A DNA stretch of 64,000 bases from Octopus bimaculoides (GCF_001194135.2 NC_068982.1:122974007-123038006), one strand, 5' to 3'; shown: positions 276-63,660, numbered from the stretch's first letter. Numbers and translations are program-made. The notes: generated by a model not told the origin, from the letters alone.

Positions 276-387
276 TGTAGAATGCCTCCAATAAGCAATA
301 ATGTCGTGGATATTCTGGCTTGGATGAAGAAGGAGATATTCACGCCATTCGTCCCAATCAATTTTTAAAGTGCCATCCTTGTCCATT
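276..387 (-). CDS. SLC25A25: SCaMC coding exon 4 (EF-hand 4 and linker); gene continues past the left edge
   Basis: Acceptor TTCTTTAAG|A, donor TCTACA|GTGAGT, 112 nt. (R)[37 protein letters not shown] has the diagnostic SCaMC MDKDG...IDW.EWR...YWRHST signature. Confidence 0.95.
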
Positions 388-4920: not shown

Positions 4921-4921
4921 N

Positions 4922-7855: not shown

Positions 7856-8300
7856 NNNNNNNNNNNNNNNNNNNNNNNNNNNNNNNNNNNNNNNNNNNNN
7901 NNNNNNNNNNNNNNNNNNNNNNNNNNNNNNNNNNNNNNNNNNNNNNNNNNNNNNNNNNNNNNNNNNNNNNNNNNNNNNNNNNNNNNNNNNNNNNNNNNNN
8001 NNNNNNNNNNNNNNNNNNNNNNNNNNNNNNNNNNNNNNNNNNNNNNNNNNNNNNNNNNNNNNNNNNNNNNNNNNNNNNNNNNNNNNNNNNNNNNNNNNNN
8101 NNNNNNNNNNNNNNNNNNNNNNNNNNNNNNNNNNNNNNNNNNNNNNNNNNNNNNNNNNNNNNNNNNNNNNNNNNNNNNNNNNNNNNNNNNNNNNNNNNNN
8201 NNNNNNNNNNNNNNNNNNNNNNNNNNNNNNNNNNNNNNNNNNNNNNNNNNNNNNNNNNNNNNNNNNNNNNNNNNNNNNNNNNNNNNNNNNNNNNNNNNNN
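7856..8300. other. Assembly gap (445 N)
   Basis: N run. Confidence 1.
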
Positions 8301-24000: not shown

Positions 24001-24654
24001 TTCAGTAGATATGATGCATGCATGTTAACCTATTAGACATGAATCATACAGTGAGTGTCCAATATATGGATTACTGAACATCACAGCTTACTAAATTTTT
24101 CTAACTGAAAAAATTAGAAATTTAAAAGGATAGCTAAATTACCAAACTAAAACCAGAAAAAAGGAAGAAAAAAAAACAATTCATCCAATATGTAACCTTT
24201 TTTTTTTCTTTTTCAGCTTATAGGTATCTCCTACCTTTAACTTATTCTATCATTATGACAATAGCTTCCCGTTTACTGAATTTCTCATATCCATCTCCTT
24301 GTAAAGCTATAAACTACAATTTTCTTTCCATTTTCCGCTGCTCCCCAACATGCTTAGACAGAAATTTAACAGAACTAAACCTTACTATTCAACTTTGCAG
24401 GCATTAATAGTTTCTAGATAAATTATTCTATTTATATACTTCTTTATGAGTTTTTAGTCATTTATTTTGTAAAAATAAGATAACTTTATACTACATTTTG
24501 ACTTTGAGAAAAGATATGCTGCTTTCAGGAAAAAACATGTGAAGGAAGTGTGAGGGTCAAATATGTTTAATACAAAAAATGTCGGTTAAAGATACAATAC
24601 AGTTTTATAGATTATGCTATTGAGAAAAGCATTAAGAAATTGTTATCTTAAAAT

Positions 24655-26634
24655 CATCATCATTTAACGTCCGTTTTCCATGTTAGCATGGGTTGGACAG
24701 TTTGACCGGGGTCTGATCTGGCAGTGTTTCTACAGCTGGATGCCCTTCCTAATGCCAACCACTCCATGAGTGCAGTGGGTGCTTTTTACGTGCCACTGGC
24801 ACGGAAGCCAGTCAAGGTGGCATTGGCATCGGCCACGTTCGGATGGTGTTCTTTACATGCCACCAGCACGGGTATCACAACTACAATTTCCATTTGATTT
24901 TTATTTTGGTGTTGATGTACTTGACTCAAGGTCTCCTCAAGCAAAACAGGGCACCCTATGATCCAAGGTACTTATGTGAAACTGGTGTAGGGTATGCCGT
25001 GAACTCACTTTATTTGTAGGGACTTCGCAGTCACAGCATATCTCTACAGGTCTCGGTCTTTCGTCATTGCCTCAGTGAGGCCCAACATTTGAAGGTCATG
25101 CTTGACCATCTCATCCCATGTCTTCCTGGGTCTACTTCTACCCCGGATTCCTTCAACTGTTTGAGAGTGGCACTTCTTCACACATCTCTCCCATGCATCC
25201 GTAGTACATGACCATACGAGCGCAGACGTCTCTCTTACATGCCACATCCGATGCTTCTTATGTCCAACATTTCTTTCAGGATGCTTACACTCTGTCGTGT
25301 GTGCACACTGACATTACACATCCAACGGATCATACTAGCTTCATTTCTTTCGAGCCTATGCATGTCCTTCGCAGTCATGGCCCATGTTTCACTGCTGTGA
25401 AGCATGGCAGTTCACACACATGCATCGTACAATCTACCTTTCACTCTGAGTGAGAGACCCTTTGTCACCGGTAGGGGTAGAAGATTTCTAAACTTTGCCC
25501 AGGCTATTCTTATTCTAATGGTAACACTCTCTGAGCATCCACCCCCACTATTAACTTGGTCACCTAGGTAGCGGAAGCTAGCAACTACTTCTAGTTTCTC
25601 CCACTGGAGTGTGATGGAATCTGTTTTCTGAGCATCTGTGGTGTCTATTGTCCCTGTGCATCTGCTGCATACAAACAATATCTTCTCGGTTAATCTTCTT
25701 TTAATGTTTCTTTTCTAATTCTGGTAGTGTTTCTGCTATGAGGAGCTCCCAGGGGCAACCTGTCTTGAATTCCTCTGTTACTGCCTGGAGGACTATGATG
25801 AATAAGAGGGGACTGAGGGCTGCTCCTTGGTGGACCCTTACTTCCACCTAGAATTCTTCACTATACTCATTGCCAACCCTAACCTTACTAACGGCATCTC
25901 TGTATAAGGCTTGTACAGCCCTTATCAATCATTCGTCAATCTCCAGTTTCCGCATCGCCCACCAGATAAGAGATTGGGGTACCCTGTCAAAGGCTTTCTC
26001 CAAGTCCACAAAAGTCAAATATAGGCGGTTTATCTTTGGCTAGGTATTTCTCCTGCAGTTGCTGTACCAGGAATATAGCATCAGTGGTGCTTCTCCCTGG
26101 CACAAAACTGAACTGCATCTCATCTAAGCAGACTCTCTCCCTAATGAGATGGGCTATGACCCTCTCCATGACCTTCATCACCTGATCCAGCAGTTTGATA
26201 CCTCTGTAGTTATTTCTATCTAGAGCATCGCCTTTACCCTTGTAGCAATTGACTATGGTGCTGCTATGCCATCATGAACTATCTGGTTTACAATGCGGGT
26301 GACTAGGCCATAGCCCACACCACCAGATGTTTTAAGCATCTCAGCAGTGATTCCTGATGGGCCAGGGGCTTTTCCTGGCTTCATACCCTTAATTGCCTTA
26401 TCTACCAGGGAGCTGTCTATTTGGATAGCTGGTCCCTCTACTGGGTCAACATTTGGCAGGCTCTCCTCCTCCCATTCATTCTCCACATTCAGCAGTCTTT
26501 CATAATGGCTTCTCCAAACCTTTCTTTTCAGTATCATTAAAAGCAGGTGCACCGTCATCCATGCGAACACATTTCTCTCCTGTGACATCACAATTTTCTC
26601 TCACACACTGTCTTGCAATCCGAAATACCTCAGT
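24655..26634 (-). mobile_element. 5'-truncated RTE-clade LINE: RT, C-terminus, 3'UTR and (ATG)n tail
   Basis: PGKAPGPSGITAEMLK, NYRGIKLL, QFSFVPGRSTTDAIF, FRYLGD, RGRSRPRKTW; tail at 24655. Frameshifted and non-functional. Confidence 0.9.
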
Positions 26635-33570: not shown

Positions 33571-33658
33571 CTTTGCAGGAGCTTTTCAGCCTCGGCTTGA
33601 TCCACATGTAATCCCAAATTTTTGAAGGATGTGATGATTTCTGACACATCAATGGCTC
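33571..33658 (-). CDS. SLC25A25: SCaMC coding exon 3 (EF-hand 3)
   Basis: Acceptor TTTTAAG|GA, donor CAAAG|GTTAGA, 88 nt, phase 1 to phase 2. (G)AIDVSEIITSFKNLGLHVDQAEAEKLLQ(R). Confidence 0.95.
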
Positions 33659-35991
33659 CTTAAAAATGGAAAAATAAGTAGGGAAATAAAGATGTATTAA
33701 ATAATTTTTTTTTTTAAAAAGGAAGAAAACGAAATAGTACATATATATATATATATATGTATAAATACAAAATCAGAAATGTAGAGTATTGAAACTTCAT
33801 TTGCCGTACCTGCCATAAAAAAAAAAGATTTTTGTAAGTGGAAAATTAGTTATCAAAAAATTTGATATAAAAATACAAAGGAATCGATATTTTCATATCC
33901 TAAGTGAAAAAATATAAAGTTTTGAAAAAGTAAGGTTCTAATTAAAATAAATTACATTCATCCTGGAAGATACAAAATATAAACAAAACTGTGTTCCAAA
34001 ATTTTTCTATTAATTCTTATATTGCAAACTGGTGCTATTTTATGGTTGTTTTTGTTAAGATCCAGACCTATCTTTTCACCTTCTTCATAGAAGTATTAAC
34101 TAATGTTTGTTTCTGTTACTATGAGGACTGTGTTGCCTGCATAATGAATATTGTTGTTGGTGGTGTTTTGTCCTGTCTATATACCTGGATTCAACAGTTC
34201 GCATAATTATTCCTCTGCGAAAACATCTGAAAGCTTCGAGACTACAGGTTAAATTCAATGGACATTGCATGAGAACACAAAGCCTGAAAACTTGGTAATA
34301 GCCAAGAAACTGAAAGAAACCACTGTAGACAAGATTCTTGATGGCCTCAATAACCTGCTAAGCCTAACCACCAGATGTACGTATTCTTTACCTTCGCCGT
34401 GTAATGGACAGAACGGGTTGGAAATCCATGGTTACTGATGTCTGTAAGCATAGCACATGAAGATAAATGTAGAGCCTGTACATGCTCATTTGACCTGGTA
34501 AAAATAGTACACGTTAGATTATATATTTTAAGGTATCCTTAAAAAAGATGATCACGACCCGAAACTAAACAATTTATACAAAAAGAAAAAAATATAAATT
34601 CTAAGAAAAAATTACCTTCAAGTGATAATCAAACAGAATATACATATTCCATTAAAATACTTTCGATTATTAACTTCGTACAATAATAAAAGTAACAATT
34701 TCTTAATTAGCTTTTAAATATATAGAGTGAAGTTGTGACGTCTAATGCAATTTTTATAGGACATTATCAATCATCAAATAAAAAGAAATAGAAAACTACG
34801 ATAAAACCACTTCGTACTCATGAAACGTTGTTGAAACGGTTGCTCAACGGACGCTCACGACTGCCAGTAATTCGTGCCATTCAAAATAAGGGAGATAAAT
34901 GCAATTCTCTCCCCTACAAGTATAGTTGGGTGTTGGGGGAAAAAAATACCTCAACATTTTCATTTTTAATAAATTAAACTAATTACTTTCTAATATTTGA
35001 GGAAGGTTGTTTCACCGTAGTTGCAACAAGAAACGATCACTCTGGATACAATTCACAAACTAAAACTTATTTAATTCCATATATCGTGTATTCCAGGTCA
35101 GGAAAATACCACAAAAAATGATAGTAACAATAAACATTTCACCCACAAACAATCAACTGATGATTCTTTTACCTCTAAAATCGACCCTTTCATTGAATAT
35201 AAAACTGTACTAAGTGACAACAGGATTTATTTTTCCAATACAAACAGATTGAGCATATCTATGCAGCATAATTTCACTATATATCCAGTTCTTGTGCATA
35301 CCAACTAGGTACTGTCAAAAAGTCGTTTTTGGTCTTCTGTAGTTACACCTACATTCCAATTCCAGTTACTTTCAGCAACTTTGACTTGATAGACAGGGAT
35401 TTATATAAATATTTTCTCTTAGATAAAGCTAGAAAGCAAACAATACAGCTTATCAGCAATGTTAAACTTTATTATGACATCAACTACACAATGTTGGATA
35501 AACAAGCTCAAATTTGCTGGAGCAGGATATAGCAAGTAAAACACCTATTTTTGAGATGGTATTGCCCATTATCCAGAGTCAGAACTCAATACATTAGTTC
35601 TTTAAAGATAATAAGCAGTTTGTCGAGAGGTAAGGCTGCTAACTTGAGCTGGTCAGTAAAGTGATGTTGGTTTGTCACAAATATATTACTATATCGGTCA
35701 GAAAATATGTAATAATAACATAGATTTTTACTTAAAATGTGAAGAAAAATAAAAAAGAGAGTCATGAAGTATTCAAAGTGAAATATAAGAAAAGATAAGA
35801 AATATACTCTATCACTTAAGAAAACTAAAACACATTCAATATTGCAGTTGAATGCAAAATTACATGTTACAGAGTTTTCTTTTTCCTAGATAGATGCTGA
35901 AACAAAGATTAGGGGGTCTCTCACTCCCAGCTGTTAGATGGCTGTTAAGTTCATATGTTCTTTGGCAGGTTTTGTCTTTCATCTTGTAGGG

Positions 35992-37480: not shown

Positions 37481-37607
37481 CATCTTGATTTGTATCGATG
37501 TTACGGAAAAACAGCCGCAGTTTCTTCTCATGTTCAGCAACATATTGGACAAACTCAGCAAAGTTAACTTGACCATCTTTTGACACATCTGTCTTTTCAA
37601 AGAATCT
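37481..37607 (-). CDS. SLC25A25: SCaMC coding exon 2 (EF-hand 2 and start of EF-hand 3)
   Basis: Acceptor TTTCATCAG|AGA, donor GATG|GTAAGT, 127 nt. RFFEKTDVSKDGQVNFAEFVQYVAEHEKKLRLFFRNIDTNQDG contains the SCaMC-typical HEKKLRL.F...D.N.DG motif. Confidence 0.95.
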
Positions 37608-39641: not shown

Positions 39642-39850
39642 TCATCATCATCATCATCGTCGTTTAACTCCGCTTTCCATGCTAGCATGGGTTGGACGAT
39701 TTGACTGAGGACTGGTGAAACCAGATGGCTACACCAGGCTACAATCTGATTTGGCAGAGTTTCTACAGCTGGACGCCCTTCCTAACACCAACCACTCAGA
39801 GAGTGTAGTGGGTGCTTTTTACGTGCCACCAGCACGAAGGCCAGTCAGGC
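39642..39850 (-). mobile_element. RTE 3'-tail element
   Basis: (CAT)n tail and the conserved tail motif shared with 24655-24900. Confidence 0.75.
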
Positions 39851-41149
39851 GGTACTCAAGGCTCTTTCAAACTGGGGAACAAGCAACTCACTGTGTTTTG
39901 TCACGGAAAATATATTCCGTTTGTTGACAAATGGTGTGCGGATGATTTTTGCCAGCTTGCTGCCTTAAGTTTCTCTTAACTATCAATAAAAAGAAACTCT
40001 CTTACTAATATAGATCACATTTCTATTTCAAAGTTTAACTGTTCCTGTGATACAATTACTCTATTCATGCAGATATTTTTGACAGAATAGAAAATAAGGA
40101 CTTTGTAGACGAGTTATTAATCAAACACCTGAAACTAGCACAAATTAAAGCTTATTACACAATGGAATCAAACAGTATTACAGTGTTGGTGTTTCTTTCT
40201 ATCATTCTCAATTATTTTATGGGTTATTCTATGTTTACAATTTAATCTCAAATTAACTAAAATTAAATCGTTATCACCTCAGATAAAATTATTAGCAGCA
40301 TTTCATCCATCTTCATGTTCTGAGATCAAATTCCTCTGAGGCTGATTTTACCTTTCATTCTTTCAGGGTCGATAAAGTAAGTACTAGTTGAACACTGGGT
40401 TGATGTAATCAACTTATCTCCTCCTCCAAAATTGCTGACCTCATGCCAAAATTTGAAATCATTATTTTAAGTCCAACTTGGCTATCTTGGAAACACCGGA
40501 GTGTTTCCTGTGTTCAAACTGCTACTTCATCAGCAATAAAATTTGAAATTCCATTTATTTTTTAGTACAAAAAATCCCTACTGAAGTAGATGTATTATAT
40601 GACATTAAATGTACCATTTCATAATTTTTTCCCCCCATTTATTTCTACAATCTGGACCAGATTTGTATTTCCACTAAAGTTGATACAAAAGGCTTGTTCT
40701 TTGTTTCATTTTTTAATGTGCTTTTTATTAGTCATATGCTTTTAACAATTGTTAATCTAGCCTAGTAACATCTTCTTGATATGCAATACTTTAAATGCTT
40801 AAATAACCTCAGAATACTTAGATCATAATTATCACATACTCTCTCTCTTTTACTCTTTTACTTGTTTCAGTCATTTTGACTGCGGCCATGCTGGAGCACC
40901 GCCTTTAGATATGACACTTTTCTGGGTCAATATAATTTTGAAACCAATAAACAATAATTTTAGGATATAAATGCCAGAGAATTATTACATGACTTTTGTA
41001 AACTGTATCAGATTATTAAGACTGTTGCAACCAATGATTTAGTCTGAACATCTGCAGGAAAAACATGGGTGGGAGACCAAGAGTGTAGTGCAGTTGCTTG
41101 CAATGGAATGGAATCCCATTAAAGTTCCCCAGGTACCCTAACTGTGTCA

Positions 41150-41595
41150 GGTGATATGATATGCTTGAGATGACCTGTTGAGTCAAGTAAAACCAAAATC
41201 GTAGCTATGGCCAGTACCCCCTGGCTGGCTCCTGTTCCGGTGGAACATAAAATGCATCATCCAAACATGGTCAATGTCAGTGTCCCCTGACTGGCTTCCA
41301 TGCCAGTGGCATGTAAAAAGCACCATCTGAACATGGCCAATGCCAGTACCCCCTGACTGGCTCCTGTGCCAGTAGCATATAAAAAGCACTATCCAAACGT
41401 GATTGATGCCAGGCTCGCCTGACTGGCTCCTGTGCCGGTGGCACATAAAAAGCACCCACTACACTCTCAGAGAGGTTGATATTAGGAAGGGAATCCAGCT
41501 ATAGAAATATTGCCAGATCAGATTAGAACCCAGTGCAGCCGCTAGCTCTGTAGACCTCAGTCAAACCGTCCAACCCATGCCAGCATGGAAAACGG
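41150..41595 (+). mobile_element. RTE 3'-tail element with four tandem units of about 63 bp
   Basis: Units CCAGTACCCCCTGACTGGCTCCTGTGCC...AAAAAGCAC at 41211-41459, then the AGGAAGGG..TCCAGC motif and (ATG)n tail. Confidence 0.75.
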
Positions 41596-44173
41596 ATGTT
41601 AAATGATGATGATTTACAATATCTACTTACAATCTTATTTTATTGGTGAAACATGGAGAGAAAATAGATAATCTACTAGAGCTGGTTGGAGTAGGAAAAC
41701 AAAGATATGAAGGTGTCTATACTTAGTCTAAAATATAAATTTTACTTAAGCCAGAAGAGAAGCCGGCAAATTTTCTAATGCTTATTAGTGAGCCAAATCA
41801 TACGGGATGACACCAAGGGAAGAGGAGTCCACAATTACTAAAACTACACTAGTTTTCAATAAGGGTGAAAAGAAAAAGAAAAAAAACGGCATGAAATTAT
41901 CATTAAGAGGTATTGCTGAGAAAGAGGACACCATTACCAGTGAGAAATCATCAATGTCAGTAAATACAGCCATTAAAATCATGAAGTGAAAGAAAGAGAA
42001 ATCTGAGATAGATATGGATTTTAGTTTCTTCTACACAACATAATTATATAGTTTGTTGTTTTGTTATTTTTGCCCAAGACATTCCATCAGTACACCATTG
42101 GTAAGTAGTCTAAATAGAATACTACTAGATTTGCCCTGTCATTACTAATTAGGTCACTGTTGAAATCTTCAGGTTCATGTAGGTGTATCTAGGACAACTC
42201 AGTCCTTTCTTTACAAGATAAACAACACCAATGAGAGAATTCATAGGTGAATGTAGGAAATGTTAGAAACAAATTTACAAGTAGACTGAACCAGTAGTTA
42301 AGTCCTTCATTAGACAATAACCTCCCAATACACAGGAAATTTATGACTAGTGTTGAGTTGTCTATTAAATGTTTTTTATTTGCTAATATATTTTTTATAT
42401 AAAAAGATAGTTTAATAAAAACCACTGGTAGTATGAATACTAATATTTCATTGCAATGCTGGTTCTCCTTTCTCATAGACATTTCAGAATACATGCTTTT
42501 TTAGCTCTCTTATTTAGTTGCAGCTAGAATGTTTGTGAATCACTAAATTAGACTAAATGTTTTATGTAAAGCTGTTTCAACTGCATTGAAGTCTTAGATT
42601 ATTATAGCACTGGCATGAACAAAGTTATAGTGTAGTTATTTGTTCACATATCATTTAGAAGTCAGAATGTAAGACTAATTAAAAAAAAAAAAAAGTTATT
42701 TTTAATCTATGCCTGAAGACTGTAGATAGGAGTGAACATTTGTTTGCCTTTTACTTTTTCTTTTTTTAATACTGCTGACATGTTTTCCTATCTCAACCAG
42801 TACACTAGTATAGTGGTGCATATATTTTAAAATAAAAGAGCATTGCCATTAATGTTTAGAGCTATTTAAAGAAATTTTTTGAAATTGATTCCATCAGTCT
42901 TTTGCTACTACAGAAAGCTATAGAGTTAACATATTTTACTTTACATGTTATATCAACATCCCACACAAAGAATAATTATTTATCCAATTAACCAGCTTGA
43001 TAAATAAGCTAACAAGGGATGCTTTAAATAATCATTTAATATGCTAAAGACAGCAACAAAATATCCTTTGAATCACACCATAGTTTAAAAGAAAAAAAGA
43101 TAATGCAGTCCTAAATAAACACTGTCCAAAGAAAACAAAAAAAACACTGTCCAAAGCTGAAATAGCTTTTGTCATAGGTCTGCTCAGTCGGGGCTAGCCT
43201 GGGGCTAAACAACAACCAATGTGATAGCACCAACTACTTGATCTTCCTTTGTTTTTACCCAAAATTTAGTTGTTTTAATTTATTCTCTTCAAAGTAAAAA
43301 CAGACAATTAATGTAAACACATTTATTATAAAATTTGAGTAGGCAGGAACTTTAAGTTTTGTCTAACGACAAAAAATCCAACTAGTACAAATGTTATTAT
43401 GAATTCAATACTAATCTCAAGAGACGCTTTATGAGAAAATGTCCGGTTGTTATTCTTAAAATTGCTTTAAAATAATAATCTCAATTTGACAGATACTGTT
43501 ACCACATTTATACATTTCGCGTCACAGCAACTGAAGTGCTACAGTCAGAACCAAGTCGTAGCTGGCCACACACCAATATCTACACAATTAACTCATTAAA
43601 ACTCATACATTTAACTTTTCACTAATGCAGTGTACACATAGACATTGAATATTTGTATATAACAAACATCTACAGTTGAACACTTAAAGGAATCTAGCAG
43701 AAATATGTGCAAATTTTAAAAAAGCATACAACACCATAACATAAAATGTTGTCTCCCCATTCTTAATATAACCATCTCTTTTCTTTATTCAAAATGTCCT
43801 GACAGTGGAGTTTGATTAGAGAAAAATTTGGCAGCCGTTTCTAACAGGTCAAGTAACTACGTAAAAGTTTCTTGTAAACTCACATAAAAATATTTATATC
43901 TATGTATGTGTGCATATTCACTTTTTTTTCAATGGGTATTTCTATTTTTTTTTGATAATATCTGGAGTCAATAACCAGTGAATATTTTTCTCATGAAAGA
44001 GCCATCATTGTTATCATCATTTAATACCCATTTTCTATGTTGGCATGGGTTGGATGGTTTGACAGGAGCTAGCAAACTGGACCAGGCTCCAGTTGTCTCT
44101 AAGGTTGGATGCCCTTCCCGATGCCAACAATTTTGCAGAGTGTAGTGGATGCACTTTACATGGTGCCAGCACA

Positions 44174-44459
44174 GGTACCTTTTCTGCGATACTGGAGCAG
44201 ATGCCTTTTACACGACACCGGCATAGGTGCCTTTTATGTGACACCGGCATAGGTGCCTTTTATGTGACACCGGCATAGGTGCCTTTTATGCGACACCAAT
44301 GTGGGTGCCTTTTACGCGACACCAACGTGGGTGCTTTTTACGCTACACTGGCACGGGTGCTCTTTACGCGACACCAGCATAAGTGCTCTTTACGTGACAC
44401 CGGCACAGGTGCTCTTTATGCGACATTGGCATAGGTGCCTTTAACATGGTGCCAGCACC
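44174..44459. repeat. 26-bp minisatellite (about 11 units) inside an RTE 3'-tail element (about 44010-44480, -)
   Basis: Consensus GGTGCCTTTTATGCGACACCGGCATA; units counted by hand in exact 26-bp register. Confidence 0.9.
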
Positions 44460-46755: not shown

Positions 46756-46871
46756 NNNNNNNNNNATATATATATATATCATCATCATCATTTAACGTCC
46801 GCTTTCCATGCTAGTATGGGTTGGACGATTTGACTGAGGACTGGTGCAACCGGATGGCTACACCAGATATA

Positions 46872-48549: not shown

Positions 48550-50244
48550 TATCAATGAGGAAGAGAACAACTATGGAATTCACAACTGCAATGCTGCAAT
48601 GTCGCCTTAAGAATAAACGAAACTATGCTTCTTCGGGTCTTGATTGTGTTACCTGCTTCTCAAATGTGGTGGACACTTTCTTCTGCACCAGCTTTCACAA
48701 TTCTTTCAGTTCTGTCTTAACAATGGTGCTACTCCGGAGCAGTGGAAAACTGCCAGTGTATCATTCCTCTGTTCAAAAAGGGTGACCGCACGTCACCTGT
48801 CAACTATCATCCAATTAGTCTTAATAGCTGCATTGCCAAACTAATGGAATCCAGTGTCAGAGAAACACCCTGGAACTTCTGGAATTCTCACAGCCTTATC
48901 TGGCCATCACAATTCAGATTTATCCCTAACTCTAGCTGCTGTGATCAACTTATCGAGTTTCTTGAAGACATCACCTAGGTCGCTGATGGTGGCTCATGGG
49001 TGAATGTTGTTTACCTTGACTTTGCTAAAGAATTTAATTTTGTGTCACACAAGTGACTTATGGCAAAACTCTCTGCAATGGGTGTGAAAGATGATCTTTT
49101 TAACTGGTTGGAATCCTTCATTCTCAGCCGAAATGTTCTAGGACAGCATTCTTCACCCTATGAGATGTCATCTGGCATACCACAGGGATATGTTCTTGGT
49201 CCCCTTTTGTTTGTTGCATACATTTATGACATAAATGCCAACTTAAAGAATGTTACAGTGCTGAAATATGCAGATGACATCAGTGATGAAATATGCAGAT
49301 GTACCTTGAGATAAAAAGGACAGACCCTGAACAATATAGATCTTTCCTGCAATCAGACCAGGACACAATGCAATAATGGATCATGGACTGGCAACGCAAG
49401 CTGGCTGTGGACAAGTGTACCACCATGCATTTTGGGAGGAAAAAGCCGGTGTCCACATACTCTCTCCACAACACTAATAATGAAGTCTTCTTGTGAACGT
49501 GACCTAGACATTACTATCAACAGCGATTTGTGCTGGACAAAGCACATCTCTAAAATTTTCATGGCCAAGGGTGTCTTGGCATCACTCAGCAAGACCTTTG
49601 TCACCCACTCTCCAGCTATCTATTTAAGGTTGTACATGGCTATGGTACACACTTGGAATTTGCACCAACAGCCTGGAACCCCTATCTTGCTCAGGACATT
49701 CACCTCCTGGAAACTGTTCAGAGACGTGCAACCAAGTGAATACTCTCCATCAGGCATCTACCATACTCTGAGCACCTTGCATCCCTGGGCATAGATACAT
49801 TGAAACTCTGACGTCTGGCAACTGATTTGGTAAACACCCACAAAATTATTAACCATCATGCCAATAACCACCTTGAGCACCTTCTTGAGCTCCAAGTGTC
49901 TAACACATGTTGGCATGCCTACAAAGTCAGAAAACAGCACAGCTCCCATGACTTTCGGAAACATTTTTTCACACTCAGAGTAGCTGAAGCATGGAACAAA
50001 CCACCTGCATCAGGTGTTAGTTGCTGAGACATTGCATCCTTTAAAACCTCCATGCTTCCTAAAATTTGCCCACACTACACCTGATATCCCCCACTCCAAA
50101 CACATGCACAAGTGTATATCATGACTCATACACTGTTCACTTTCCTGACTTTTGTACATAATTCAATGTACTGTACATGCACCTTCCATGAGTTGTAGTG
50201 CACCTGAGCCCTATACACAATAATTTCATTATTATTATTATTAT
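48550..50244 (+). mobile_element. Decayed CR1-clade LINE: RT domain and 3' end
   Basis: PLFKKGDR...NYHPISL, VYLDFAK, SGIPQGYVLGPLLF..YI.D, LKYADD, ERDLDI, FFTLRV..AWN; (ATT)n tail at 50227-50244. Many stops. Confidence 0.9.
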
Positions 50245-51029: not shown

Positions 51030-51260
51030 GCACCATGTAAAAAGAACCCATGTTAGGACACATAAAATGCACCTATGCTGGGTCACAAAAAGCAAGCAGC
51101 ACACTCTGTAAAGTGGTTGGTATTAGGAAGGGCATCCAGCCACAGAAACCAACTCAAGTCAGACTGGAACCTGGTCCAGCTCTGCGGCTTGCCAACTTTG
51201 GTCAAACCATCCAACTCATGCCAGCATGGAAAATGGATGTTAAATGATGACGATGACGAC
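51030..51260 (+). mobile_element. RTE 3'-tail element
   Basis: AGGAAGGGCATCCAGCC motif and ATGATGACGATG tail. Confidence 0.7.
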
Positions 51261-53388: not shown

Positions 53389-55723
53389 TATATGTATAAT
53401 TTAAGGCTTTTCTATTATCGCCCTTATTAAGAAATTGCATTTGTTAATTAAATGCCTGGTTTATATTAGAATGGACAAAAGCAAGTGAAATACAATTTTT
53501 TACAGCCAAAAACAAGAGAAATGAATATTTTAACAATGCAAGTAGAAATAATAATATTCCACAAATTTTAATATATAAATATCACTAGTATTAAATATCC
53601 ATTTCAGATTAGTGTGACCCTATCAAAATGAGCATACAATATTTTAAAGAAGAATTAACCAAGCTAAAAACATTCAGCCAATACAGAAGGTTAAGTTACT
53701 TGAAAGTGATGATCACACTCATGCTGATGGTCCATGAGATATTTAAAAAGATATTGAAAAGTACGATCTTCGAGACTAGTGCTTCTCAACCGGGGTTCCC
53801 TGGAACCCTAGGATTCCGCCAGAATCCTAATGCTAATTTCATGATCATAATATTACTATATATGCACAACATATTATTGGTTATTGTAATATAGACATCT
53901 TCCTAGTTAACCTATTATGTTATCAAAAAATATATACATGATATTTTACCACATGAACTATGAAAAAAATATGAGAAAGATATGGTATATAAAGATATGG
54001 AATAAGCTCTGATAAATAATTTGGACTTGCTGATGGACAGTTTGCTACAGCTGTTTGAACTGTCAAATTATAGAACCAAAATAGTGCACTTAATTAACTA
54101 CTTGAAGATATTAAATGAACTAGAATAGGTTTTGAATATCAAATAGGTTGGCCTTTTTTGTCGTTATCAATAGTATAGCAGAAACAGTGACTTAACCACT
54201 TTTGTTGTGCCAGAGTGGTTTCCTGAAACAAGTACCTCACTCCATATATGTTACCACCTCTTCACTCAAGGGTGTGTCATGAAGGAATGACAAGTCAATA
54301 CATTTGCAGCATCCATGGAGCTATAATGGAGGCCAGAAATAGTACATATCTGTCTTAGGGTACCTCCCTCTAGGTTTTCTATAGCGGTTAATTCCCTTAA
54401 CCTCTTTTTTAATGCTCAATAAATTACCCCACATGGCAGCAGGAGTTTATTATTATAGTGGGCATTATTTGTGCAGAGCCAATCCCACTTTCCCATCCTC
54501 AAAACTTGTATCAGTCTGATGCAACAAGTGCCACAAGCTCAGTAGTTATCAGGGTGCATAATTTGTATAGAGTTACCTTCTCTTAGACGAGCAGCTAAAT
54601 AGTTGAAGGGTCTCATCTGTCCTGGGCCTATCAGTGAGTGACCTATCTGTGTGTGACCAGTGAGTGACATTCTGGAGGCAATTCCATGACATGCTAATTA
54701 ACCCTGACAGGTGCTACTACTCCAGGTCAGAGCAGACCTGAGAACAATTTCTCAAAAATCATGGAACTCTTGAAATAGGGCTCTGCTACCAAAGCCAGTC
54801 TGAAGTCATACTCGGGACGTGAATGTCAAATAATGAGGACAGAAAAATACTATGCTTAAGTACGGAAGGCAATAAGTCGAATAATATTTAATGGGATAAC
54901 TTTGAAGGTCAGCTATCTATCAGAGCCTACAGAAAATTTAAGAGATCTAAAATGAAAATAATTTATGTACATTTTCAGCAGTTGCTAATGTCTATAAGTA
55001 CAATTTCAATGTCAACAGTGAACTATCAAAGCTTCCTTCAGTGGCATCAATATAGATATGTCGTCAAAACGTGCACGACTGTAAATTAATAATCTTTCAG
55101 GATAGAGGAGATTCCACTACCAAAATTAGAAACTGAAGAATATCAGGACGTGGTCTCTTGGTAGCTAAAGACGTTGAACAACGGTCAATATAAAGATTTT
55201 TACCAGTTAACGAAAAAAAAGAAAGTTTGTTGGTTGTTAACTGTGTAGAAAACGAATATGAAAAAAAAATATGCGCAAACGAACGTGGGGGGAGGACTAC
55301 CGGAAAATTCTCAAGGTCCGATTTTTCCGTCATAACTTTCAGGAAAATGGATATATACATTTTTTTTTTTTTACGGAATCCCACGTTTCCGTTTATGGAG
55401 AATTCGATTCTGAAAAAAAATTGTTTGTAAAATTTGAATTCTTCAAACCCCTCCCACCTCCCAATTCTACGGCCTTGGCCTTCAAGCAGGTTATCCACAT
55501 GCTAGAAGTAACAGCCAAATCTCACAAAACTGCGATAACATAATGAAAGAAATATGTAATCAATCTGCCCATTTTCAGTTCCACAAACACGATGTTTTGC
55601 GCTGGTCAAATGATTCTCTTTAATTTCACTTTGTCACAGTATTTCTTTGCTATTTTTACTTTTCTTCTGCACTCATATTTTTTGTAACTTTCAAAGCAAA
55701 AAAAAAAAAAAAAAAAAAAAAAA

Positions 55724-55774
55724 NNNNNNNNNNNNNNNNNNNNNNNNNNNNNNNNNNNNNNNNNNNNNNNNNNN
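55724..55774. other. Assembly gap (51 N) after a poly(A) run; another 10-N gap at 51733-51742
   Basis: N runs. Confidence 1.
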
Positions 55775-58022
55775 AACACTTTAATTTCACATTACTGTGG
55801 GAAATTACTCTGAAAGAAATCTTGCCGAAATCTTTTGCAGAAAGGTGAATAGATTGATTATATATTTCTTTCATCCATTTTCCTGAAAGTTATGAGGGAA
55901 AAATCGGATCTTGTGAATTTTCCGAAAGTCCTCTCCCCCTCGCCAGGTTCGTTTGCGCAATTAGTTTTCTACACAGTTGTTAACACCCAGCAAGCTGGGG
56001 GGAGGGTATGCTTTCGTTAACGAGTGTGAATCTTCATATTGACCGAAACAACATGCAGAAAGCGATGGCAACAAAAAAGTGAAGATTATATAGCTATAAA
56101 ACGTTCTATAACGCAAAGTGAATTGTAAAACAATAATGCATTTATACTTTAATTGGGAGGAATTTTAGAAATTCAGAATATACTTAAAGATTGGCTGATC
56201 GTCGTGTCTATATGCGAGTTAACATACATACATACAAACACACAATCGTACCCTCCCATCTTAAATATCAACACAAACATTAACAAGAAAAAACGATAGG
56301 CACTCCCTCTGATCTCAGAAATATAAAAAAATAAAAGAATCTGAATTTTTAAAAAAAATCAATAACAAACAAACCACCCACAACACAAAGGAAAAACTAC
56401 TTCAGCAAGCCAAATAAACTTACTAACGAAAGTTTGAGAAAGTGAAAGTGGGACACTAAACTCAAAGATTGCTACTTCCGTTATCTCACATTAGCTGGTA
56501 TTACTTTGTTGGTTACTGAAGAACTATTTTCTTTGACACTGTACTGTGACTGGCTTTTTTTCTTTTCTAGAGAATATTTTAAGGTCCTTGTGTTTAAGAT
56601 GTGTAGTGCAAATAAATTAATACCAACTCAGATTTGAGAAAGTGGTACGCTATTCTCAAAGATCGACAGTAATTGCTCTCAACATCTGAAATTTTCATTC
56701 GTAACTTTCCAATAAAAGCAGATTGAGGACGAACATTTTGTTGCTACAAAATATAAGGAGCAATCTCGTCCTTTTCCATATGGACATTCGTTTGAGTAGT
56801 AGCTTGCGGATATAACAGTGAGATTGAACTAGCAGATAAAAAGTTCGTGTATTACACACACTAAATTATACAGACTATTTTCAAGTAACGATTTAAAAGC
56901 ATTGAGTTTTTCTAAAATTTAGTGAAAACAACAGATTTAACTGTTTTACTGAAGGTCACAGCAACCTTCAATTGATCCCTTTCTGTATTTGAGTGCACAT
57001 ATTTGTAAAAGAATGCTTAGATAGCAAAAACAAGATTCCTTTTGTTCACAAATACCAAGTAACAATTATTTCACCCAAACATTATGGAAACTTGCACTTA
57101 TTTATAATTATTACACTCTCAGTAAATTATTAAATATTTCAGTAGAAAATGTTATATAAAATATAGGGAGGACGTCAAGATTATAATGACATCCATAGAA
57201 ACCGAATTAAACTGAGTCAAAATTAATTTCTAACAAAATGCACGAAGAAATGAACATAGTGCTCATCATGCATTTCTCAAAAGATCAAAATTAAATACAA
57301 TTTTGCATAACACTCTTAAAATTTACGGAGGCAATAAGACGTTGTGATGGTCATTCATTAATTAAGGACACTAGTGATTCGGACAAACTGTCGTAAACTT
57401 AATTAAAAACGTATGACCGCGAAACGGCAACCCAATTCTTTCAAGTAAAAATTCATACTAAATTCCTAATATGCTGCGTACACATGCACTCGGTATGTCC
57501 AGTGGAATTCAGCTTTGCCTCGTATCCTTCTTATTAACATGCATTAAGAAAAGGACTATAAAGAAACTGAGACATTAATTAATAAAACTAACCCCCACGT
57601 GTCCGTGAAAAAATTAAAAGATACGTGCTTCAATGTAAAAAGAAAATAAAAATACGATAAAGAATTATTATCATTAGGCATATAAATGCCTACACATAAT
57701 TAAATGAAGCTCACACAGTCAAAACTAGTTAAATGAAATAAACAGGAAGGCGCTTTCTTGATTAAGTTGAAATAAGTGTGACAAACAAATCGCTTAATTT
57801 ATGAAAGACCACGGACGATCGTTTTTGTAATACAAAAGCAAGATAGAAATAAAATTTGTGTGATATGGTAATAAATACTGTAAACAGAATAGTCTTATAT
57901 TAAACTAAGATCAGTTTAGATCTCCACGTAGAACTTATGAAAATATATTCATTGAGGCATACAACGTGAAAATTTTCCTAAGACAATAAAGGAGGGAAAA
58001 AATTATTTTAATTGGTTTCTAC

Positions 58023-58193
58023 CTGCGCCTGTCCCGGTACTTGAGGAACTTCCATCTGACTTAATGCTGCACTCAAATCATGAATGTCGATAGAACCATC
58101 TTTATTTACATCTAGACGGTTAAAAAGTGCTGACAGCTTTTCTTTTTCTTCGCGAGAAAGCTCATGATGAGTGTTATCCGGAGAAGACGACAT
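58023..58193 (-). CDS. SLC25A25: SCaMC (Ca2+-binding mitochondrial ATP-Mg/Pi carrier; invertebrate co-ortholog of SLC25A23/24/25), coding exon 1, EF-hand 1
   Basis: ATG at 58193 in AAAATGT context. 57 codons MSSSPDN...LFNRLDVNKDGSIDIHDL...PGQAQ with an EF-hand loop. Ends at CAG|GTAGAA, phase 0, in frame with exon 2. Paralog symbol is approximate. Confidence 0.9.
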
Positions 58194-59500
58194 TTTATAA
58201 TCACATGAAATACCACTTACGCTCGCAGACAAGCAGAGTAAGACCGCAGCAAATGATGACTGGTGTGCGTGTTACGATATAAAAACTTCATAATTATTTT
58301 ATTTTTAATTTATAACATATATAATATATAAATGTGTGTATTCCATTGTGTAGGAATAAATATCTCTGAAATTAAATTTAAGTTAATTGAAATATTATAG
58401 TATTTGTACTAATGTTTTTTCCATAAGTGTAATTAATGTTAATAATGTTATTATTATTAGTAATTTATGTTCATTTTCATAAGTTAGAAGTCCACTCCTT
58501 ACAAGTGAATTGTGGGTTTTTTAGCATATTCTTAATTATCTTCGTGACACACCATGCGAATAGCAGTCGAAGGTGTGGAAATTATACTGAACGTAGATTT
58601 TTTTTTTTACATTTTTTAAATTTCTTGCAACAATAAAAATTTGCAAACATCTGCATACGTTTTAAATTTTCCAACTCAGAAGGACCCTTTATTATGCGGT
58701 CGCTCAACCGACTAGAAATAGTAGTCAAATTTCTTTCAAACCACATCTAACCGTTTCAAAAAGGAATGTATACCTTTGAATGCCGTTTCCGATATATAAA
58801 AAGACATGAGTATCATGACTGGAACCCTTTTTTTTTTTTTGATTCTTGATATGCCTGCTTAATCAAGTCTAATCTGGAGTTAAACAAGAAATTACTTTTT
58901 TTAAATGAAATCTGAAAAAGAAACGACAAAATCCAGTCTTATTTTCTTCATTCTTTACAATAATTATAATAATCCTTTGTACTATAGGCACAAGGCCTGA
59001 AATTTGGGGGGAAGGGATCAAGTCGATTATATTGAATCCAGTGAGTAACTGGTACTTATTTAATCGGCCTCAAAAGGATGAAAGGCAAAGTCTAGATCGG
59101 CGGAATTTGAACTCAGAACGTAGCCACGGGCGAAATACCGCTAAGCATTTCATCCCGATAATGTTTATTTAATTTTGTTGTGTTTTGTTTCTATAGCTAA
59201 TTAATTAGCTTATGATCTTTTATTTCAGGGAAAATGAAGTGTAGCAGTGTTCAGAAAAGCTACAAGCGGCGTACTGACTGAGTCAAAGGAAAAAGTATTT
59301 GGAATACTAGAAGAATAGTGAATAGGATTCAGTTACTTAACGTCGGCAGAATTTCAGATTAGGCATCCCATCCCATCTTTCATGAGAAAGGAAAATGTAA
59401 TCTTTTTTTTTCTTTTTATCCTTGTTCTTTCATTCAACGGAAATTGCGATTCTGAGTTTTTGGGGTTATTTTTATTCAAAATTTCGATTTTTCACATTTT
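58194..59500 (-). promoter_or_regulatory. Probable 5'UTR and promoter region of the SCaMC gene
   Basis: Directly upstream of the start codon. CpG dinucleotides are retained across about 55.0-59.5 kb but scarce in most intronic DNA. AT-rich TATA-like stretch at about 58305-58330. TSS not determinable from sequence. Confidence 0.5.
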
Positions 59501-61569
59501 TGCCACCCACTTCCGTAACTTTCTTCGGGTGTAGTTTTGGTATAGCCGTCCCTCTAAGTTTCATTCTTCAGTGGGAAGGAAAAGGATGGTTTCTTTTCTT
59601 TTCTTCTGGTAGAGAGTGGGGCACAATGAGTAAGATTTTCTGCATTTTGACTTCGAGAAAAAGTATATTTTTTACAAATGTTCACTACCTTAAAAAAAAC
59701 TATACCATCTAAACAAATGACCTTCTCCAAATACATTAAAAACACTATAACATAATTTGAACGCTATCTCAGAAAACTATCTCCATTAGCTGGGGGGAAA
59801 TGAGGAAACTAAGTAAGGTAAATTTGTCTCTTCAGTTCTCCAGAACTGCATTCGAAAAATGACTCATGCATACCAATATCCATCCTTACACAGAAAAATC
59901 AGAAATGCAACAAAAGTTTTAAATGTTTAGGTCAAATTGAAAGAAGATCATAAAAATGGCACGATATGAAATCTGAAAACAAAACATTCTCTATAGTTTC
60001 TTCACGATCTGCTGGAGTGGATCTCTTCATGATACATTTACACACCATGTAGTTAAAGAGAAAAAATTATTGAAGTTAGTCATTACTCATTTTGCCCCAG
60101 TTAGACATCATGATTTGAAAGTTGTAGATTATCAAATTAGACATTAGTGTGGGAGAAAAATTGACTTGTAATCCAACAGAGAAAAGAATATTGATTGTTA
60201 AGTATTAAAAATTATCCAGATATTTTATTAACAACCTCAATTACAAATCGAGTTCGAGTTGAAGAAAAATTTCTCGAAAAATAAGTACCTGTCACCTGAC
60301 TATTTTTCAAACTCTTTCAACTTCAACAACTATGTTAACCAATTTTTACTCCCAAAAATGATGCCATGGTACAAAATTATTATGACGTAATACTTGATGG
60401 CTTCAAACAGGAAGGGAGAAAATAAGAAATCTGAAATTATTCATGTTGCCCCCTCATACAACGAAAATTACGATTTTGACCAATTTATTTTCCAAAAATT
60501 TCTTTTTATATTCTGCTTCTTTTTTCTGTACCTTTTTCCTTTCCCATTAGATGTGGCACTTTGAAGAATAGCTAATCCAAAATACCCTCTTCTATGGGTC
60601 ATGGGTCTCCTAATCCAAAACTCTGCCTCAAAATAATGGCTGCAAGATTAAATGGACATATTACATTCAGAAATTATGTATTCAACAAGCGAGGTAGTGG
60701 TTGTTTGTTATGTTTAAGAAACACATATTTGTTCAAGTAAGATTACCAGTCTTTTAAGGGATTAAAGTCAAGACCAAAACAATTAAACTGCTGTAAGAGC
60801 CCTACATTTCATCAAGAATGTAGAGAGATTAAATGAAATTATTCAAGGAGCTTGTAACAGGTTTCAAATTTGTGGTAATTTTAATTATAGCTTTATAGAC
60901 TGAACACTTTAAAAGGGCAAAATCTTTTGTAGATGTGTTGGATTCTTTCTAATACAGTATACAAATCAGATACTAAAATATACTGAATTTTGCTCTGACA
61001 AAAGGTTTGATTATAGAAATTTTAAAGGTAAATTCATCCTTCAAGTGGTTTTGATCATAATGGGTTTGAACAATCTGATCTGATCAGATCAGCTGATATG
61101 TTTCAGAAGACTAAGTGCATATGTTCCAGATTTCAAAACAGAAAAGGAGCAAAATCCCTGTTTTACATGGCTAACTTCTTAATCAAAGAACTTCCTCTAC
61201 TAAATGTGTATAAACACACCATTTCCAATTTATATTGACAAAAATGCATCAAAGAGATTTTGGTTTTCTCCTTAAAATCAAACAATATTTCAATCTTGAG
61301 TAGTTTTCCTTTTTTAAAGACTTAAATATATCCCACTGTGATTTACAGCTTCTATATTTGGTAGCTGGTACTGCATAGATTTAAAATAAAAATACAATGA
61401 GCTAAGGAAAATTATTTGAATGGGCAAACAGCATGAAATCAGTTAAGTTGCCATATGCAAAAAGTTTTTAATTGAAATTTTAATAAAACTAACTACAACT
61501 GTTAATTGTTTAACACTTTTTTTTTCTCACTTGGTTTATCTGTCTGATACCTCTATATTTACTTCCCTC

Positions 61570-63427: not shown

Positions 63428-63660
63428 TCATCAGCATCATCATTTAACATCCGTTTTCCATGCTGGCATGGGTTGAACAGTTTTACAGGAGCTGACAATT
63501 CAGAGAACTGCACCGGGCTCTTTTGTCTGCTTTGGCATGGTTTCTATGGTTCAATGCTCTCCCTAATGCCATGCACTTTACAGAGTATACAGGGTACTTT
63601 TTATGTGGCACCAATGCTGGTGCTCTTTACATGGTACCAGCACCAGCAGGGTTGCCAACT
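63428..63660 (-). mobile_element. RTE 3'-tail element
   Basis: (CAT)n tail plus conserved tail and subrepeat motifs. Confidence 0.65.

What the first reader, a model, noticed from the sequence alone, without database searches (positions are those of the whole stretch)
34392..35330. Candidate internal promoter in intron 2 producing an SCaMC isoform without EF-hands 1-3
Seen: about 26 CpGs in 34200-35330 by hand count, versus about 3 in 8341-9600, peaking at 34810-34875, with no transposon I could recognise. On the minus strand downstream there is a donor TTGAAG|GTAATT (34616), a 174-nt intron ending GCTTACAG, and a 50-nt exon (34441-34392) with an ATG in a strong Kozak context (AACCATGG, 34429) encoding MDFQPVLSITRR and ending AG|GTAAAG. 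That end is phase 2, which matches exon 4 (giving MDFQPVLSITRR-R-MDKDG...) but not exon 3, where it would stop after RSH. Either route leaves only EF4 plus the carrier. Established: methylated invertebrate gene bodies lose CpG while promoters keep it, and mammalian SCaMC-2 has N-terminal variants lacking EF-hands. Inference: a Ca2+-insensitive or tissue-specific short isoform.
Basis: partly seen in the sequence, partly recalled or inferred. Interest (0 to 1): 0.72.

Follow-up and report, generated by a model that had tools for sequence, protein, structure and literature searches.

The report
CpG-preserved island in SCaMC intron 2
A roughly 1-kb stretch inside an intron of a calcium-regulated mitochondrial carrier gene has kept its CpG dinucleotides while the rest of the gene body lost them, which marks it as a likely unmethylated regulatory element, but the short protein isoform proposed from it is not shown and looks structurally unlikely.

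Summary
Positions 34200-35330 carry 26 CpGs (o/e 0.86, against 0.25 for the rest of the gene body; Poisson P about 2e-7). GC content equals the flanks. The only other stretch with this signature is the 5.1-kb zone around exon 1. I found no in-window copy, terminal repeat, target-site duplication, tRNA or Rfam match, Pfam domain or protein homologue, so nothing indicates a transposon, though the genome itself could not be searched. A TATA box lies exactly 30 nt upstream of an Inr, just downstream of the CpG peak. These exon and promoter features are only modestly rarer than chance (about 0.02-0.15 expected in the patch, with thresholds set post hoc), and an equally good decoy sits in CpG-poor intron 3. 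The isoform needs constitutive exon 3 to be skipped; otherwise the ORF stops after RRRSH. It would also lose the entering helix of EF4 while keeping the inhibitory amphipathic helix. No transcript, methylation or close-relative data were reachable. Most likely this is a germline-hypomethylated intragenic regulatory island, either a promoter or an enhancer. The short isoform remains speculative, at about 6%.

The parts
34200..35330 (.). CpG-preserved patch: 26 CpG, o/e 0.86, GC 0.33. The core 34380-34873 holds 18 CpGs.
34799..34873 (.). CpG peak: 8 CpGs in 75 bp, local GC about 0.45. Contains AACCGTTTCAACAACGTTTCA.
34751..34758 (-). TATAAAAA box-like motif; its first T is at -30 relative to the Inr A at 34728.
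34724..34730 (-). Inr-like TCACTCT (YYANWYY), with putative +1 at 34728.
34616..34728 (-). Hypothetical non-coding or partly coding first exon A (113 nt if the TSS is 34728). It has upstream ATGs at 34652 (uORF MEYVYSV*) and 34645 (in frame with exon B) and ends at donor AAG|GTAATT (7.2 bits).
34442..34615 (-). Hypothetical 174-nt intron (GTAATT...GCTTACAG). Its acceptor tract scores 12, against 13-14 for the real exons.
34392..34441 (-). Hypothetical 50-nt exon B. ATG at 34429 in the context AACCATGG; encodes MDFQPVLSITRR plus AG; donor AAG|GTAAAG (7.2 bits); ends in phase 2.
33571..33658 (-). Canonical exon 3, encoding (G)AIDVSEIITSFKNLGLHVDQAEAEKLLQ(R): the end of the EF3 loop with its exiting helix, plus the entering helix of EF4. 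The proposed isoform would have to skip it.
276..387 (-). Canonical exon 4, encoding (R)[37 protein letters not shown]: the EF4 loop and exiting helix, plus the amphipathic helix. Its Met has an A at -3 and a G at +4.
37481..37607 (-). Canonical exon 2 (EF2 and the start of EF3); upstream boundary of intron 2.
54700..59800 (.). Reference: the CpG-normal zone (o/e 0.91, GC 0.33) around exon 1 (CDS 58193-58023, minus strand). This is the canonical 5' hypomethylated zone.

Best explanation
The patch is most likely an intragenic island that has stayed unmethylated in the germline inside an otherwise methylated, CpG-depleted gene body. That makes it a protein-bound cis-regulatory element of the SCaMC locus.

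The proposed mechanism is inferred, not shown. Transcription-coupled gene-body methylation drives CpG to TpG decay across introns. Sites occupied by an active promoter or enhancer complex are protected from methylation and keep their CpGs, as the zone around exon 1 does. The CpG-dense 34799-34873 segment would be the factor-binding core.

If the element is a promoter, the best candidate start is the TATA/Inr pair (34758/34728) firing in the sense direction. Its transcripts would most probably splice into exon 3 and carry several upstream ORFs. They would then be regulatory or non-coding, or would translate only weakly from the exon-4 Met. They would probably not encode the MDFQPVLSITRR isoform.

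I put about 0.5 on the hypomethylated regulatory island. About half of that, roughly 0.25 overall, is a sense-strand promoter.
For: - CpG o/e is 0.86-1.07 in the patch against 0.25 in the gene body (P about 2e-7), with a matching drop in TpG/CpA excess.
- GC content (0.33) equals the flanks and matches the exon-1 zone (GC 0.33, o/e 0.91). The other CpG-excess patches are GC-rich (0.40-0.53) and overlap in-window multicopy repeats or long ORFs.
- CpG density peaks centrally and tapers to both sides.
- No insertion hallmark was found: no in-window copies, no TIR or LTR, no direct repeat of 10 nt or more flanking the patch, no tandem repeats, and no tRNA or Rfam family. There is also no Pfam domain in the six frames (positive control), no homologue among 5.8 billion proteins, and no open frames under the mitochondrial code.
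- A TATA box sits at -30 from a perfect Inr, with a donor at +113, in the sense orientation and just downstream of the CpG peak. About 5 independent such loci occur in 128 kb of strand.
- Published octopus methylomes show gene-body methylation with unmethylated TSS and promoter regions (PMC9476566).
Against: - There is no direct methylation, chromatin or transcript evidence.
- The species' genome could not be searched, so a low-copy or non-autonomous young element is not excluded.
- Bulinus truncatus has no CpG island in the orthologous intron 2, and Biomphalaria pfeifferi has one that is ambiguous and unalignable. The element is therefore not an ancient molluscan feature.
- Three other windows reach nearly the same CpG excess.
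- The motif coincidences were evaluated post hoc.
Confidence: 0.5

Rival explanations
1. An internal promoter fires at about 34728. Exon A is spliced to exon B (34441-34392), and exon B is spliced directly to exon 4, skipping exon 3. The product is MDFQPVLSITRR-R-MDKDG..., or MYILFDYHLKTSVT-MDFQ... if translation starts at the in-frame ATG at 34645, fused to the carrier domain.
For: - All the sequence elements exist, and the frame stays open from both ATGs through exon 4.
- The full model (Kozak context, open ORF, donor of at least 7 bits, acceptor, upstream donor) has an empirical rate of 0.018 per kb per strand per phase. That gives about 0.02-0.04 expected in the patch.
- It lies in the strongest CpG-excess window of the gene body.
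- Mammalian SCaMC genes have several splice variants, and the paralogue SLC25A41 lacks the regulatory domain (PMC6283063, PMC3391283).
Against: - It requires skipping exon 3, which lies 733 nt downstream with a better polypyrimidine tract (score 14 against 12), in favour of an acceptor 34 kb away. With exon 3 included the ORF ends RRRSH*.
- The thresholds were set at the candidate's own values. Without the Kozak criterion the rate is 0.068 per kb, and for ATG-to-donor alone it is 0.55 per kb per phase. An equal decoy exists at 13214/13125.
- Donor-like sites are not enriched in the patch: 2 observed against 1.7 expected.
- The product has no recognisable EF-hand. It keeps the amphipathic 'pin' helix (NIHDIIAYW) but lacks pocket 2, so the locking-pin model predicts an inhibited carrier (PMC6283063).
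- A fly SCaMC without its EF-hands barely rescues the mutant (PMC6095617).
- No homologous N-terminus was found, though these are weak negatives.
Confidence: 0.06
2. The patch is a recent insertion that has not yet had time to lose CpG in a methylated gene body. It would be a non-autonomous transposon, a solo LTR or other foreign DNA. Its TATA box and splice-like sites would be either the element's own or chance matches.
For: - Cephalopod and mollusc genomes are about half repeats (PMC9476566).
- Other CpG-excess patches in this window are repeat- or ORF-associated.
- A solo LTR would naturally carry a TATA box.
- Only 64 kb of the genome could be searched for copies.
Against: - A CpG o/e near 1 implies a very young element, which should still show intact hallmarks. 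None was found: no TIR or LTR, no direct repeat of 10 nt or more at the edges, no poly-A or microsatellite tail, and no coding remnant or homologue.
- There is also no tRNA-like head and no in-window copy.
- GC content is identical to the flanks, and CpG density tapers rather than stopping sharply.
Confidence: 0.22
3. The patch has no function. It would be a local fluctuation in CpG decay, for example a stretch poorly methylated for structural reasons, and the exon and promoter motifs are chance matches in AT-rich DNA.
For: - Several other windows show a comparable CpG excess.
- Every motif-level feature has a non-negligible chance rate.
- The shared 11-mer with the exon-1 upstream region has an E-value of about 1.
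Against: - The Poisson tail is 2e-7, and this is the top window outside the 5' zone.
- It is the only CpG-excess patch with background GC content and no repeat association.
- The central CpG peak, TATA/Inr pair and donor are arranged coherently in the sense orientation.
Confidence: 0.15

Closest known systems
Intragenic ('orphan') CpG islands or unmethylated regions that mark alternative promoters or enhancers inside methylated gene bodies
   Same: A short CpG-retaining island sits inside a CpG-depleted, presumably methylated transcription unit. It has the same compositional signature as the gene's own 5' zone, and core-promoter-like motifs lie next to the CpG peak.
   Different: It is known here only from a sequence proxy, with no methylome, CAGE or chromatin data. 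It is AT-rich (GC 0.33) and so would not pass vertebrate CpG-island criteria. No conservation could be shown.
Mammalian SCaMC (SLC25A23/24/25) N-terminal splice variants and the N-domain-less paralogue SLC25A41 (SCaMC-3L)
   Same: It is the same gene family, and the exon boundaries around EF3 and EF4 correspond to where a human SCaMC-1 probe aligns. The idea is likewise a carrier with a reduced Ca-sensing domain. SLC25A41 is described as a Ca-independent ATP-Mg/Pi carrier (PMC6283063).
   Different: SLC25A41 is a separate gene that lacks the whole regulatory domain. The proposed product would keep the EF4 loop and the amphipathic helix, lose the pocket that sequesters that helix, and need a constitutive exon to be skipped. 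The specific claim that SCaMC-2 variants lose EF-hands rests on memory of del Arco and Satrustegui 2004 and could not be read here.
Young transposable-element insertions in methylated gene bodies
   Same: A discrete CpG-normal block sits in a CpG-poor intron.
   Different: It has no repeats, termini, target-site duplication or coding remnant. Its GC content equals the flanks, whereas the recognisable repeats in this window are GC-rich (0.40-0.53).

Membership tests
Intragenic unmethylated island / alternative promoter | CpG retained relative to a depleted gene body (sequence proxy for germline hypomethylation) | tested here: met
   o/e 0.86-1.07 against 0.25; P about 2e-7; same signature as the exon-1 zone
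Intragenic unmethylated island / alternative promoter | Measured absence of 5mC, with open chromatin or H3K4me3 | not testable with these tools
   No methylome or chromatin data are reachable
Intragenic unmethylated island / alternative promoter | Transcript 5' ends (CAGE or long reads) mapping to the island | not testable with these tools
   The species' transcripts are absent from the protein and contig collections
Intragenic unmethylated island / alternative promoter | Core promoter motifs at canonical spacing | tested here: inconclusive
   TATA at 34758 and Inr A+1 at 34728 (spacing -30), with a donor at +113. About 0.04-0.09 such arrangements are expected per kb per strand, so about 0.05-0.1 in the patch, assessed post hoc
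Intragenic unmethylated island / alternative promoter | Conservation of the island at the orthologous intron in relatives | tested here: inconclusive
   Only distant gastropod orthologues were reachable. Bulinus intron 2 has no island. Biomphalaria has a CpG-normal stretch with no sequence similarity to this one
Coding alternative first exon giving an N-terminally truncated SCaMC | Usable splice sites and an ATG-initiated ORF in phase with a downstream constitutive exon | tested here: inconclusive
   In phase with exon 4 only. With exon 3 included the ORF stops (RRRSH*). Donors score 7.2 bits (real exons 5.5-9.9) and the acceptor scores 12 (real exons 13-14)
Coding alternative first exon giving an N-terminally truncated SCaMC | Clearly rarer than chance decoys | tested here: inconclusive
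   0.02-0.04 expected in the patch with all criteria and 0.15 without the Kozak criterion. An equal decoy exists in intron 3
Coding alternative first exon giving an N-terminally truncated SCaMC | Homologous N-terminus or transcript in any database | tested here: not met
   No hit for the 50-aa product or for any frame of the patch. This is a weak negative, because the word index missed known relatives and the species is absent from the database
Coding alternative first exon giving an N-terminally truncated SCaMC | The retained part forms a functional EF-hand or regulatory unit | tested here: not met
   Pfam finds EF-hands in the 166-aa canonical N-terminus but none in the short one. The entering helix of EF4 lies in exon 3
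Transposable element (young insertion) | Multiple copies | tested here: inconclusive
   No copy within the 64-kb window. The genome was not available
Transposable element (young insertion) | Terminal inverted or long terminal repeats, target-site duplication, or a poly-A tail | tested here: not met
Transposable element (young insertion) | Homology to a transposase, reverse transcriptase or integrase | tested here: not met
   Six-frame Pfam scan found nothing (control). Six-frame search against 5.8 billion proteins found nothing
Nuclear mitochondrial DNA insert (NUMT) | Open frames under the invertebrate mitochondrial code, or mitochondrial gene homology | tested here: not met
   16-30 stops per 500 codons in all frames under table 5. 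No Pfam or Rfam hit
Intronic small RNA gene (snoRNA, miRNA, tRNA) | Match to an Rfam family or a tRNA model | tested here: not met
   No match at gathering threshold. The only weak hit is SNORD12 at E 2.2 and 18.6 bits, against a 43-bit threshold. No tRNA

The most novel reading that the evidence does not exclude
A mollusc, possibly a cephalopod, SCaMC gene carries a germline-unmethylated internal promoter in intron 2. Its transcripts skip exon 3 and encode a carrier with no working EF-hands that still keeps the inhibitory amphipathic helix. This would be a built-in Ca-blind form, possibly constitutively locked or dominant-negative. It would have arisen independently of the mammalian N-domain-less paralogue SLC25A41.
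Probability: 0.06. Interest if true: 0.5.

Novelty: new member of a known kind. Interest (0 to 1): 0.3.

Why it matters
If the patch is a real unmethylated island, it is a concrete and cheaply testable candidate for an intragenic regulatory element in a lophotrochozoan with mosaic methylation. Few such elements have been mapped in these animals. It also shows that CpG o/e taken together with GC content can separate candidate regulatory islands from transposon-derived CpG patches using sequence alone. If the short isoform existed, it would offer a natural test of the locking-pin model of Ca regulation in ATP-Mg/Pi carriers, because the pin would be kept and its receptor removed. As it stands, this is an ordinary and plausible regulatory candidate, not a surprise.

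Tried and rejected
- **Searches for the proposed isoform.** A protein search with the 50-aa hypothetical N-terminus returned nothing. That search is insensitive: it also missed gastropod proteins sharing [11 protein letters not shown] that later found.
- **Search for the orthologous locus.** A metagenome scan found only a 27% identical EF-hand protein. Exact-match scans of the CpG core in viral and prokaryote genome collections were empty.
- **Distant orthologues.** L001, L002, L004 and L005 were fetched. None has sequence similarity to the patch, so they are uninformative for intron conservation.
- **NUMT hypothesis.** Rejected because stops are abundant under the mitochondrial code.
- **Small-RNA gene.** Rejected.
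- **Duplication of the canonical promoter.** Rejected, because the patch shares no similarity with 54.7-59.8 kb beyond one 11-mer at E about 1.
- **Cassette-exon reading of exon B between exons 2 and 3.** By hand reading, 50 nt shifts the frame, so this would only give a nonsense product.
- **Base rate from nearby transposon-like ORFs.** I tried to confirm by Pfam and PDB that the ORFs at 20175-20693, 26253-26591 and 49432-49794 are transposon-derived. There were no hits, so their mariner-like and RT-like look rests on memory only.
- **The SCaMC-2 variant claim.** The primary paper (PMC1180714) is not held. Only general statements on splice variants could be cited.

Full report
**Gene context**

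A tblastn probe with a human SCaMC-1 N-terminus, followed by direct reading, places four exons of an EF-hand mitochondrial carrier gene on the minus strand:
- Exon 1: CDS 58193-58023, encoding EF1.
- Exon 2: 37607-37481, encoding EF2 and the start of EF3.
- Exon 3: 33658-33571, encoding the rest of EF3 and the entering helix of EF4.
- Exon 4: 387-276, encoding the EF4 loop, its exiting helix and the amphipathic helix NIHDIIAYW.

The 166-aa product hits the Pfam EF-hand families strongly. Its nearest available relatives are gastropod SCaMC-2 proteins at 62-65% identity. So the gene is a mollusc-like SCaMC, but I could not verify that the window comes from a coleoid. The finding lies in intron 2 (37480-33659), 733 nt or more upstream of exon 3. 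Intron 3 is 33 kb long.

**The observation**

The hand counts are exact: 26 CpGs in 34200-35330, 3 in 8341-9600 and 7 in 34810-34875. The window as a whole has CpG o/e 0.31. Outside the patch and the exon-1 zone, the background is 0.252. Given local composition, 7.8 CpGs are expected in the patch and 26 are seen, a Poisson tail of 2e-7. It is the top 1.13-kb window outside the exon-1 zone. The complementary TpG/CpA excess falls from 1.28 to 1.04-1.11, as expected if deamination decay did not happen here.

Three other windows come close in significance: 20.05-21.2 kb, 4.05-5.2 kb and 45.25-46.4 kb. CpG-excess patches are therefore not unique in this gene body.

What sets this patch apart is its composition. 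GC is 0.33, the same as its flanks and the same as the 5.1-kb CpG-normal zone around exon 1 (54.7-59.8 kb, GC 0.33, o/e 0.91). The other patches are GC-rich (0.40-0.46) with o/e 0.35-0.64. Most of them overlap short GC-rich elements present in 2-8 copies within the window, or carry long ORFs.

**Is it a transposon or other insert?**

I found no sign of one:
- No second copy in the window.
- No terminal inverted or long terminal repeats.
- No flanking direct repeat of 10 nt or more; 9-mers are below chance expectation.
- No tandem repeat or tail.
- No tRNA-like sequence and no Rfam family. The only weak hit is SNORD12 at E 2.2.
- No Pfam domain in any of six frames. The tool was validated by the EF-hand control.
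- No homologue of any frame among 5.8 billion proteins.
- Frequent stops even under the invertebrate mitochondrial code, which argues against a NUMT.
- No exact match of the CpG core in the viral or prokaryotic collections.

CpG density peaks at 34799-34873 and tapers to both sides rather than ending abruptly. An element young enough to keep o/e near 1 inside a methylated gene body should still show its hallmarks, so their absence counts against the insertion rival. The real test is copy number in the whole genome, and that could not be run.

**Promoter-like anatomy**

On the sense (minus) strand, TATAAAAA begins at 34758, exactly 30 nt upstream of the A of a perfect Inr, TCACTCT (A+1 at 34728). 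This pair lies 70-145 nt downstream of the CpG peak and 113 nt upstream of the donor AAG|GTAATT. A second TATA/Inr pair follows at 34724/34693.

Window-wide there are 21 TATA/Inr pairs on the two strands, many of them inside TA microsatellites. About five independent loci also have a donor of at least 7 bits within 50-300 nt. The chance expectation for the patch is therefore about 0.05-0.1. The arrangement is coherent, but I evaluated it after seeing it. I treat it as modest support for a sense promoter, not as proof.

**The exon model**

The acceptor tract scores 12, against 13-14 for the real exons.

I scanned both strands and all three phases for models at least as good on every criterion. 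The criteria were a purine at -3 and G at +4, an open frame to a donor of at least 7 bits, an acceptor scoring at least 12 within 100 nt with no intervening ATG, and an upstream donor. Seven such models turned up, or 0.018 per kb per strand per phase. That gives 0.02 expected in the patch for phase 2, or 0.04 if either useful phase would have been accepted.

Because the thresholds are the candidate's own values, these figures are optimistic:
- Dropping the Kozak criterion raises the rate to 0.068 per kb.
- A bare ATG-to-donor ORF occurs at 0.55 per kb per phase.
- One fully equivalent decoy (ATG 13214, donor 13125, phase 2) lies in CpG-poor intron 3.
- Donor-like sites are not enriched in the patch: 2 observed against 1.7 expected.

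**Consequences for the protein**

Spliced products were built and translated.
- Only the route A+B+4, which skips exon 3, keeps an ORF running into the carrier. On that route an upstream ATG at 34645 in exon A is in frame, giving MYILFDYHLKTSVT-MDFQ..., and is preceded by a 7-codon uORF from 34652.
- Every route that includes exon 3 ends the new ORF (RRRSH*). It places three to five upstream ORFs ahead of the first in-frame Met, the M of MDKDG in exon 4.
- Skipping exon 3 means ignoring a strong acceptor 733 nt downstream in favour of one 34 kb away.

The Ca-binding loop and exiting helix are in exon 4, but the entering helix (AEAEKLLQR) is in exon 3. Pfam sees no EF-hand in the 50-aa N-terminus.

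Exon 4 also encodes the amphipathic helix. In the published locking-pin model this helix blocks the carrier unless it is sequestered by the Ca-bound EF3/EF4 pocket (PMC6283063). A product that keeps the pin and loses the pocket is predicted to be locked, rather than freely active and Ca-independent. In Drosophila, a SCaMC lacking the EF-hand region barely rescues the mutant (PMC6095617). [quoted passage not shown]

**Comparative and literature checks**

The species' own proteins and transcripts are not in the searchable collections. Two gastropod orthologous loci were retrieved:
- Bulinus truncatus has a 1.7-kb, CpG-poor intron 2 with no island.
- Biomphalaria pfeifferi has a 6.7-kb intron 2 with satellite arrays and a CpG-normal stretch. 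That stretch shares no sequence with the patch.

The element is therefore not an old molluscan feature, and its conservation among closer relatives is unknown.

Published octopus methylomes show methylation concentrated in the bodies of about 14,000 genes. A large class of those genes is unmethylated at the TSS and promoter (PMC9476566). Reviews confirm that mammalian SCaMCs have several splice variants (PMC6283063, PMC3391283). The specific claim about EF-hand-less SCaMC-2 variants could not be read.

**Verdict**

The CpG anomaly is real, and its best reading is a germline-hypomethylated intragenic regulatory island (about 0.5). Roughly half of that probability is a sense-strand promoter using the TATA/Inr pair at 34758/34728. 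A young hallmark-less insertion (about 0.22) and a functionless fluctuation (about 0.15) remain open. The specific EF-hand-less isoform is possible but unlikely (about 0.06). It would be a new instance of a known kind of element and is of modest interest. Genome-wide copy number, methylome data, 5'-end data and junction reads would settle it quickly.

Noticed in passing
window 54700-59800: A 5.1-kb CpG-normal zone (125 CpGs, o/e 0.91, GC 0.33) surrounds exon 1 (CDS 58193-58023, minus strand). It is presumably the canonical unmethylated promoter and 5' zone. CpG depletion resumes upstream of 59.8 kb.
   Followed up: partly
window 55182-55352 and 55873-56045: Inverted repeat pair (187 nt, 72% identity) flanking the assembly gap at 55724-55774 inside intron 1. 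Both arms keep their CpGs (o/e 0.9-1.8).
   Followed up: no
window 20175-20693 (+): A 172-aa ORF whose N-terminus looks, from memory, like a mariner-type transposase HTH region. It sits inside the CpG-excess patch at 20.05-21.3 kb. Pfam and PDB sequence searches gave no hit, so its identity is unconfirmed.
   Followed up: partly
window 26253-26591 (-) and 49432-49794 (+): ORFs with motifs that resemble LINE reverse-transcriptase fragments from memory. Pfam gave no hit.
   Followed up: partly
window 13214-13125 (-): A chance twin of the candidate exon in CpG-poor intron 3. It has an ATG in a strong Kozak context, an open frame, a donor of at least 7 bits in phase 2, an acceptor and an upstream donor.
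   Followed up: partly
window 4984-5131: A dense cluster of 12 CpGs in 150 bp, directly beside a TA microsatellite and the 247-nt N gap at 4675-4921. Its nature is unknown.
   Followed up: no
window 34831-34841 and 58749-58759: The 11-mer TTGAAACGGTT occurs in the CpG peak of the patch and about 560 nt upstream of the exon-1 ATG. AACCGTTTCA occurs only at these two places in the window. This is not statistically significant (E about 1).
   Followed up: partly
window 2881-3264, 24651-24872, 39648-39856, 41210-41615, 44013-44442, 51061-51259, 63428-63612: A family or families of short (about 200-400 nt) GC-rich (0.44-0.53) interspersed repeats, present in 3-8 copies in the window. They are SINE-like in size and have CpG o/e 0.2-0.6.
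   Followed up: no
L005 10600-12700 and 14000-15250 (Biomphalaria pfeifferi orthologue): Intron 2 of the gastropod orthologue holds two tandem satellite arrays and a CpG-normal stretch (o/e about 0.9-1.2). Bulinus truncatus (L004) has a short, CpG-poor intron 2 instead.
   Followed up: partly
L001 178-687 (Logan SRR29726840): This contig from an unidentified relative has exons 3 and 4 fused, with no intron 3, but intron-like sequence with proper splice signals on both outer sides. It is either a partly spliced transcript or a genome that lacks intron 3.
   Followed up: no
window 4675-4921, 7856-8300, 46756-46765, 51733-51742, 55724-55774: Assembly gaps (runs of N). None is near the finding.
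   Followed up: yes
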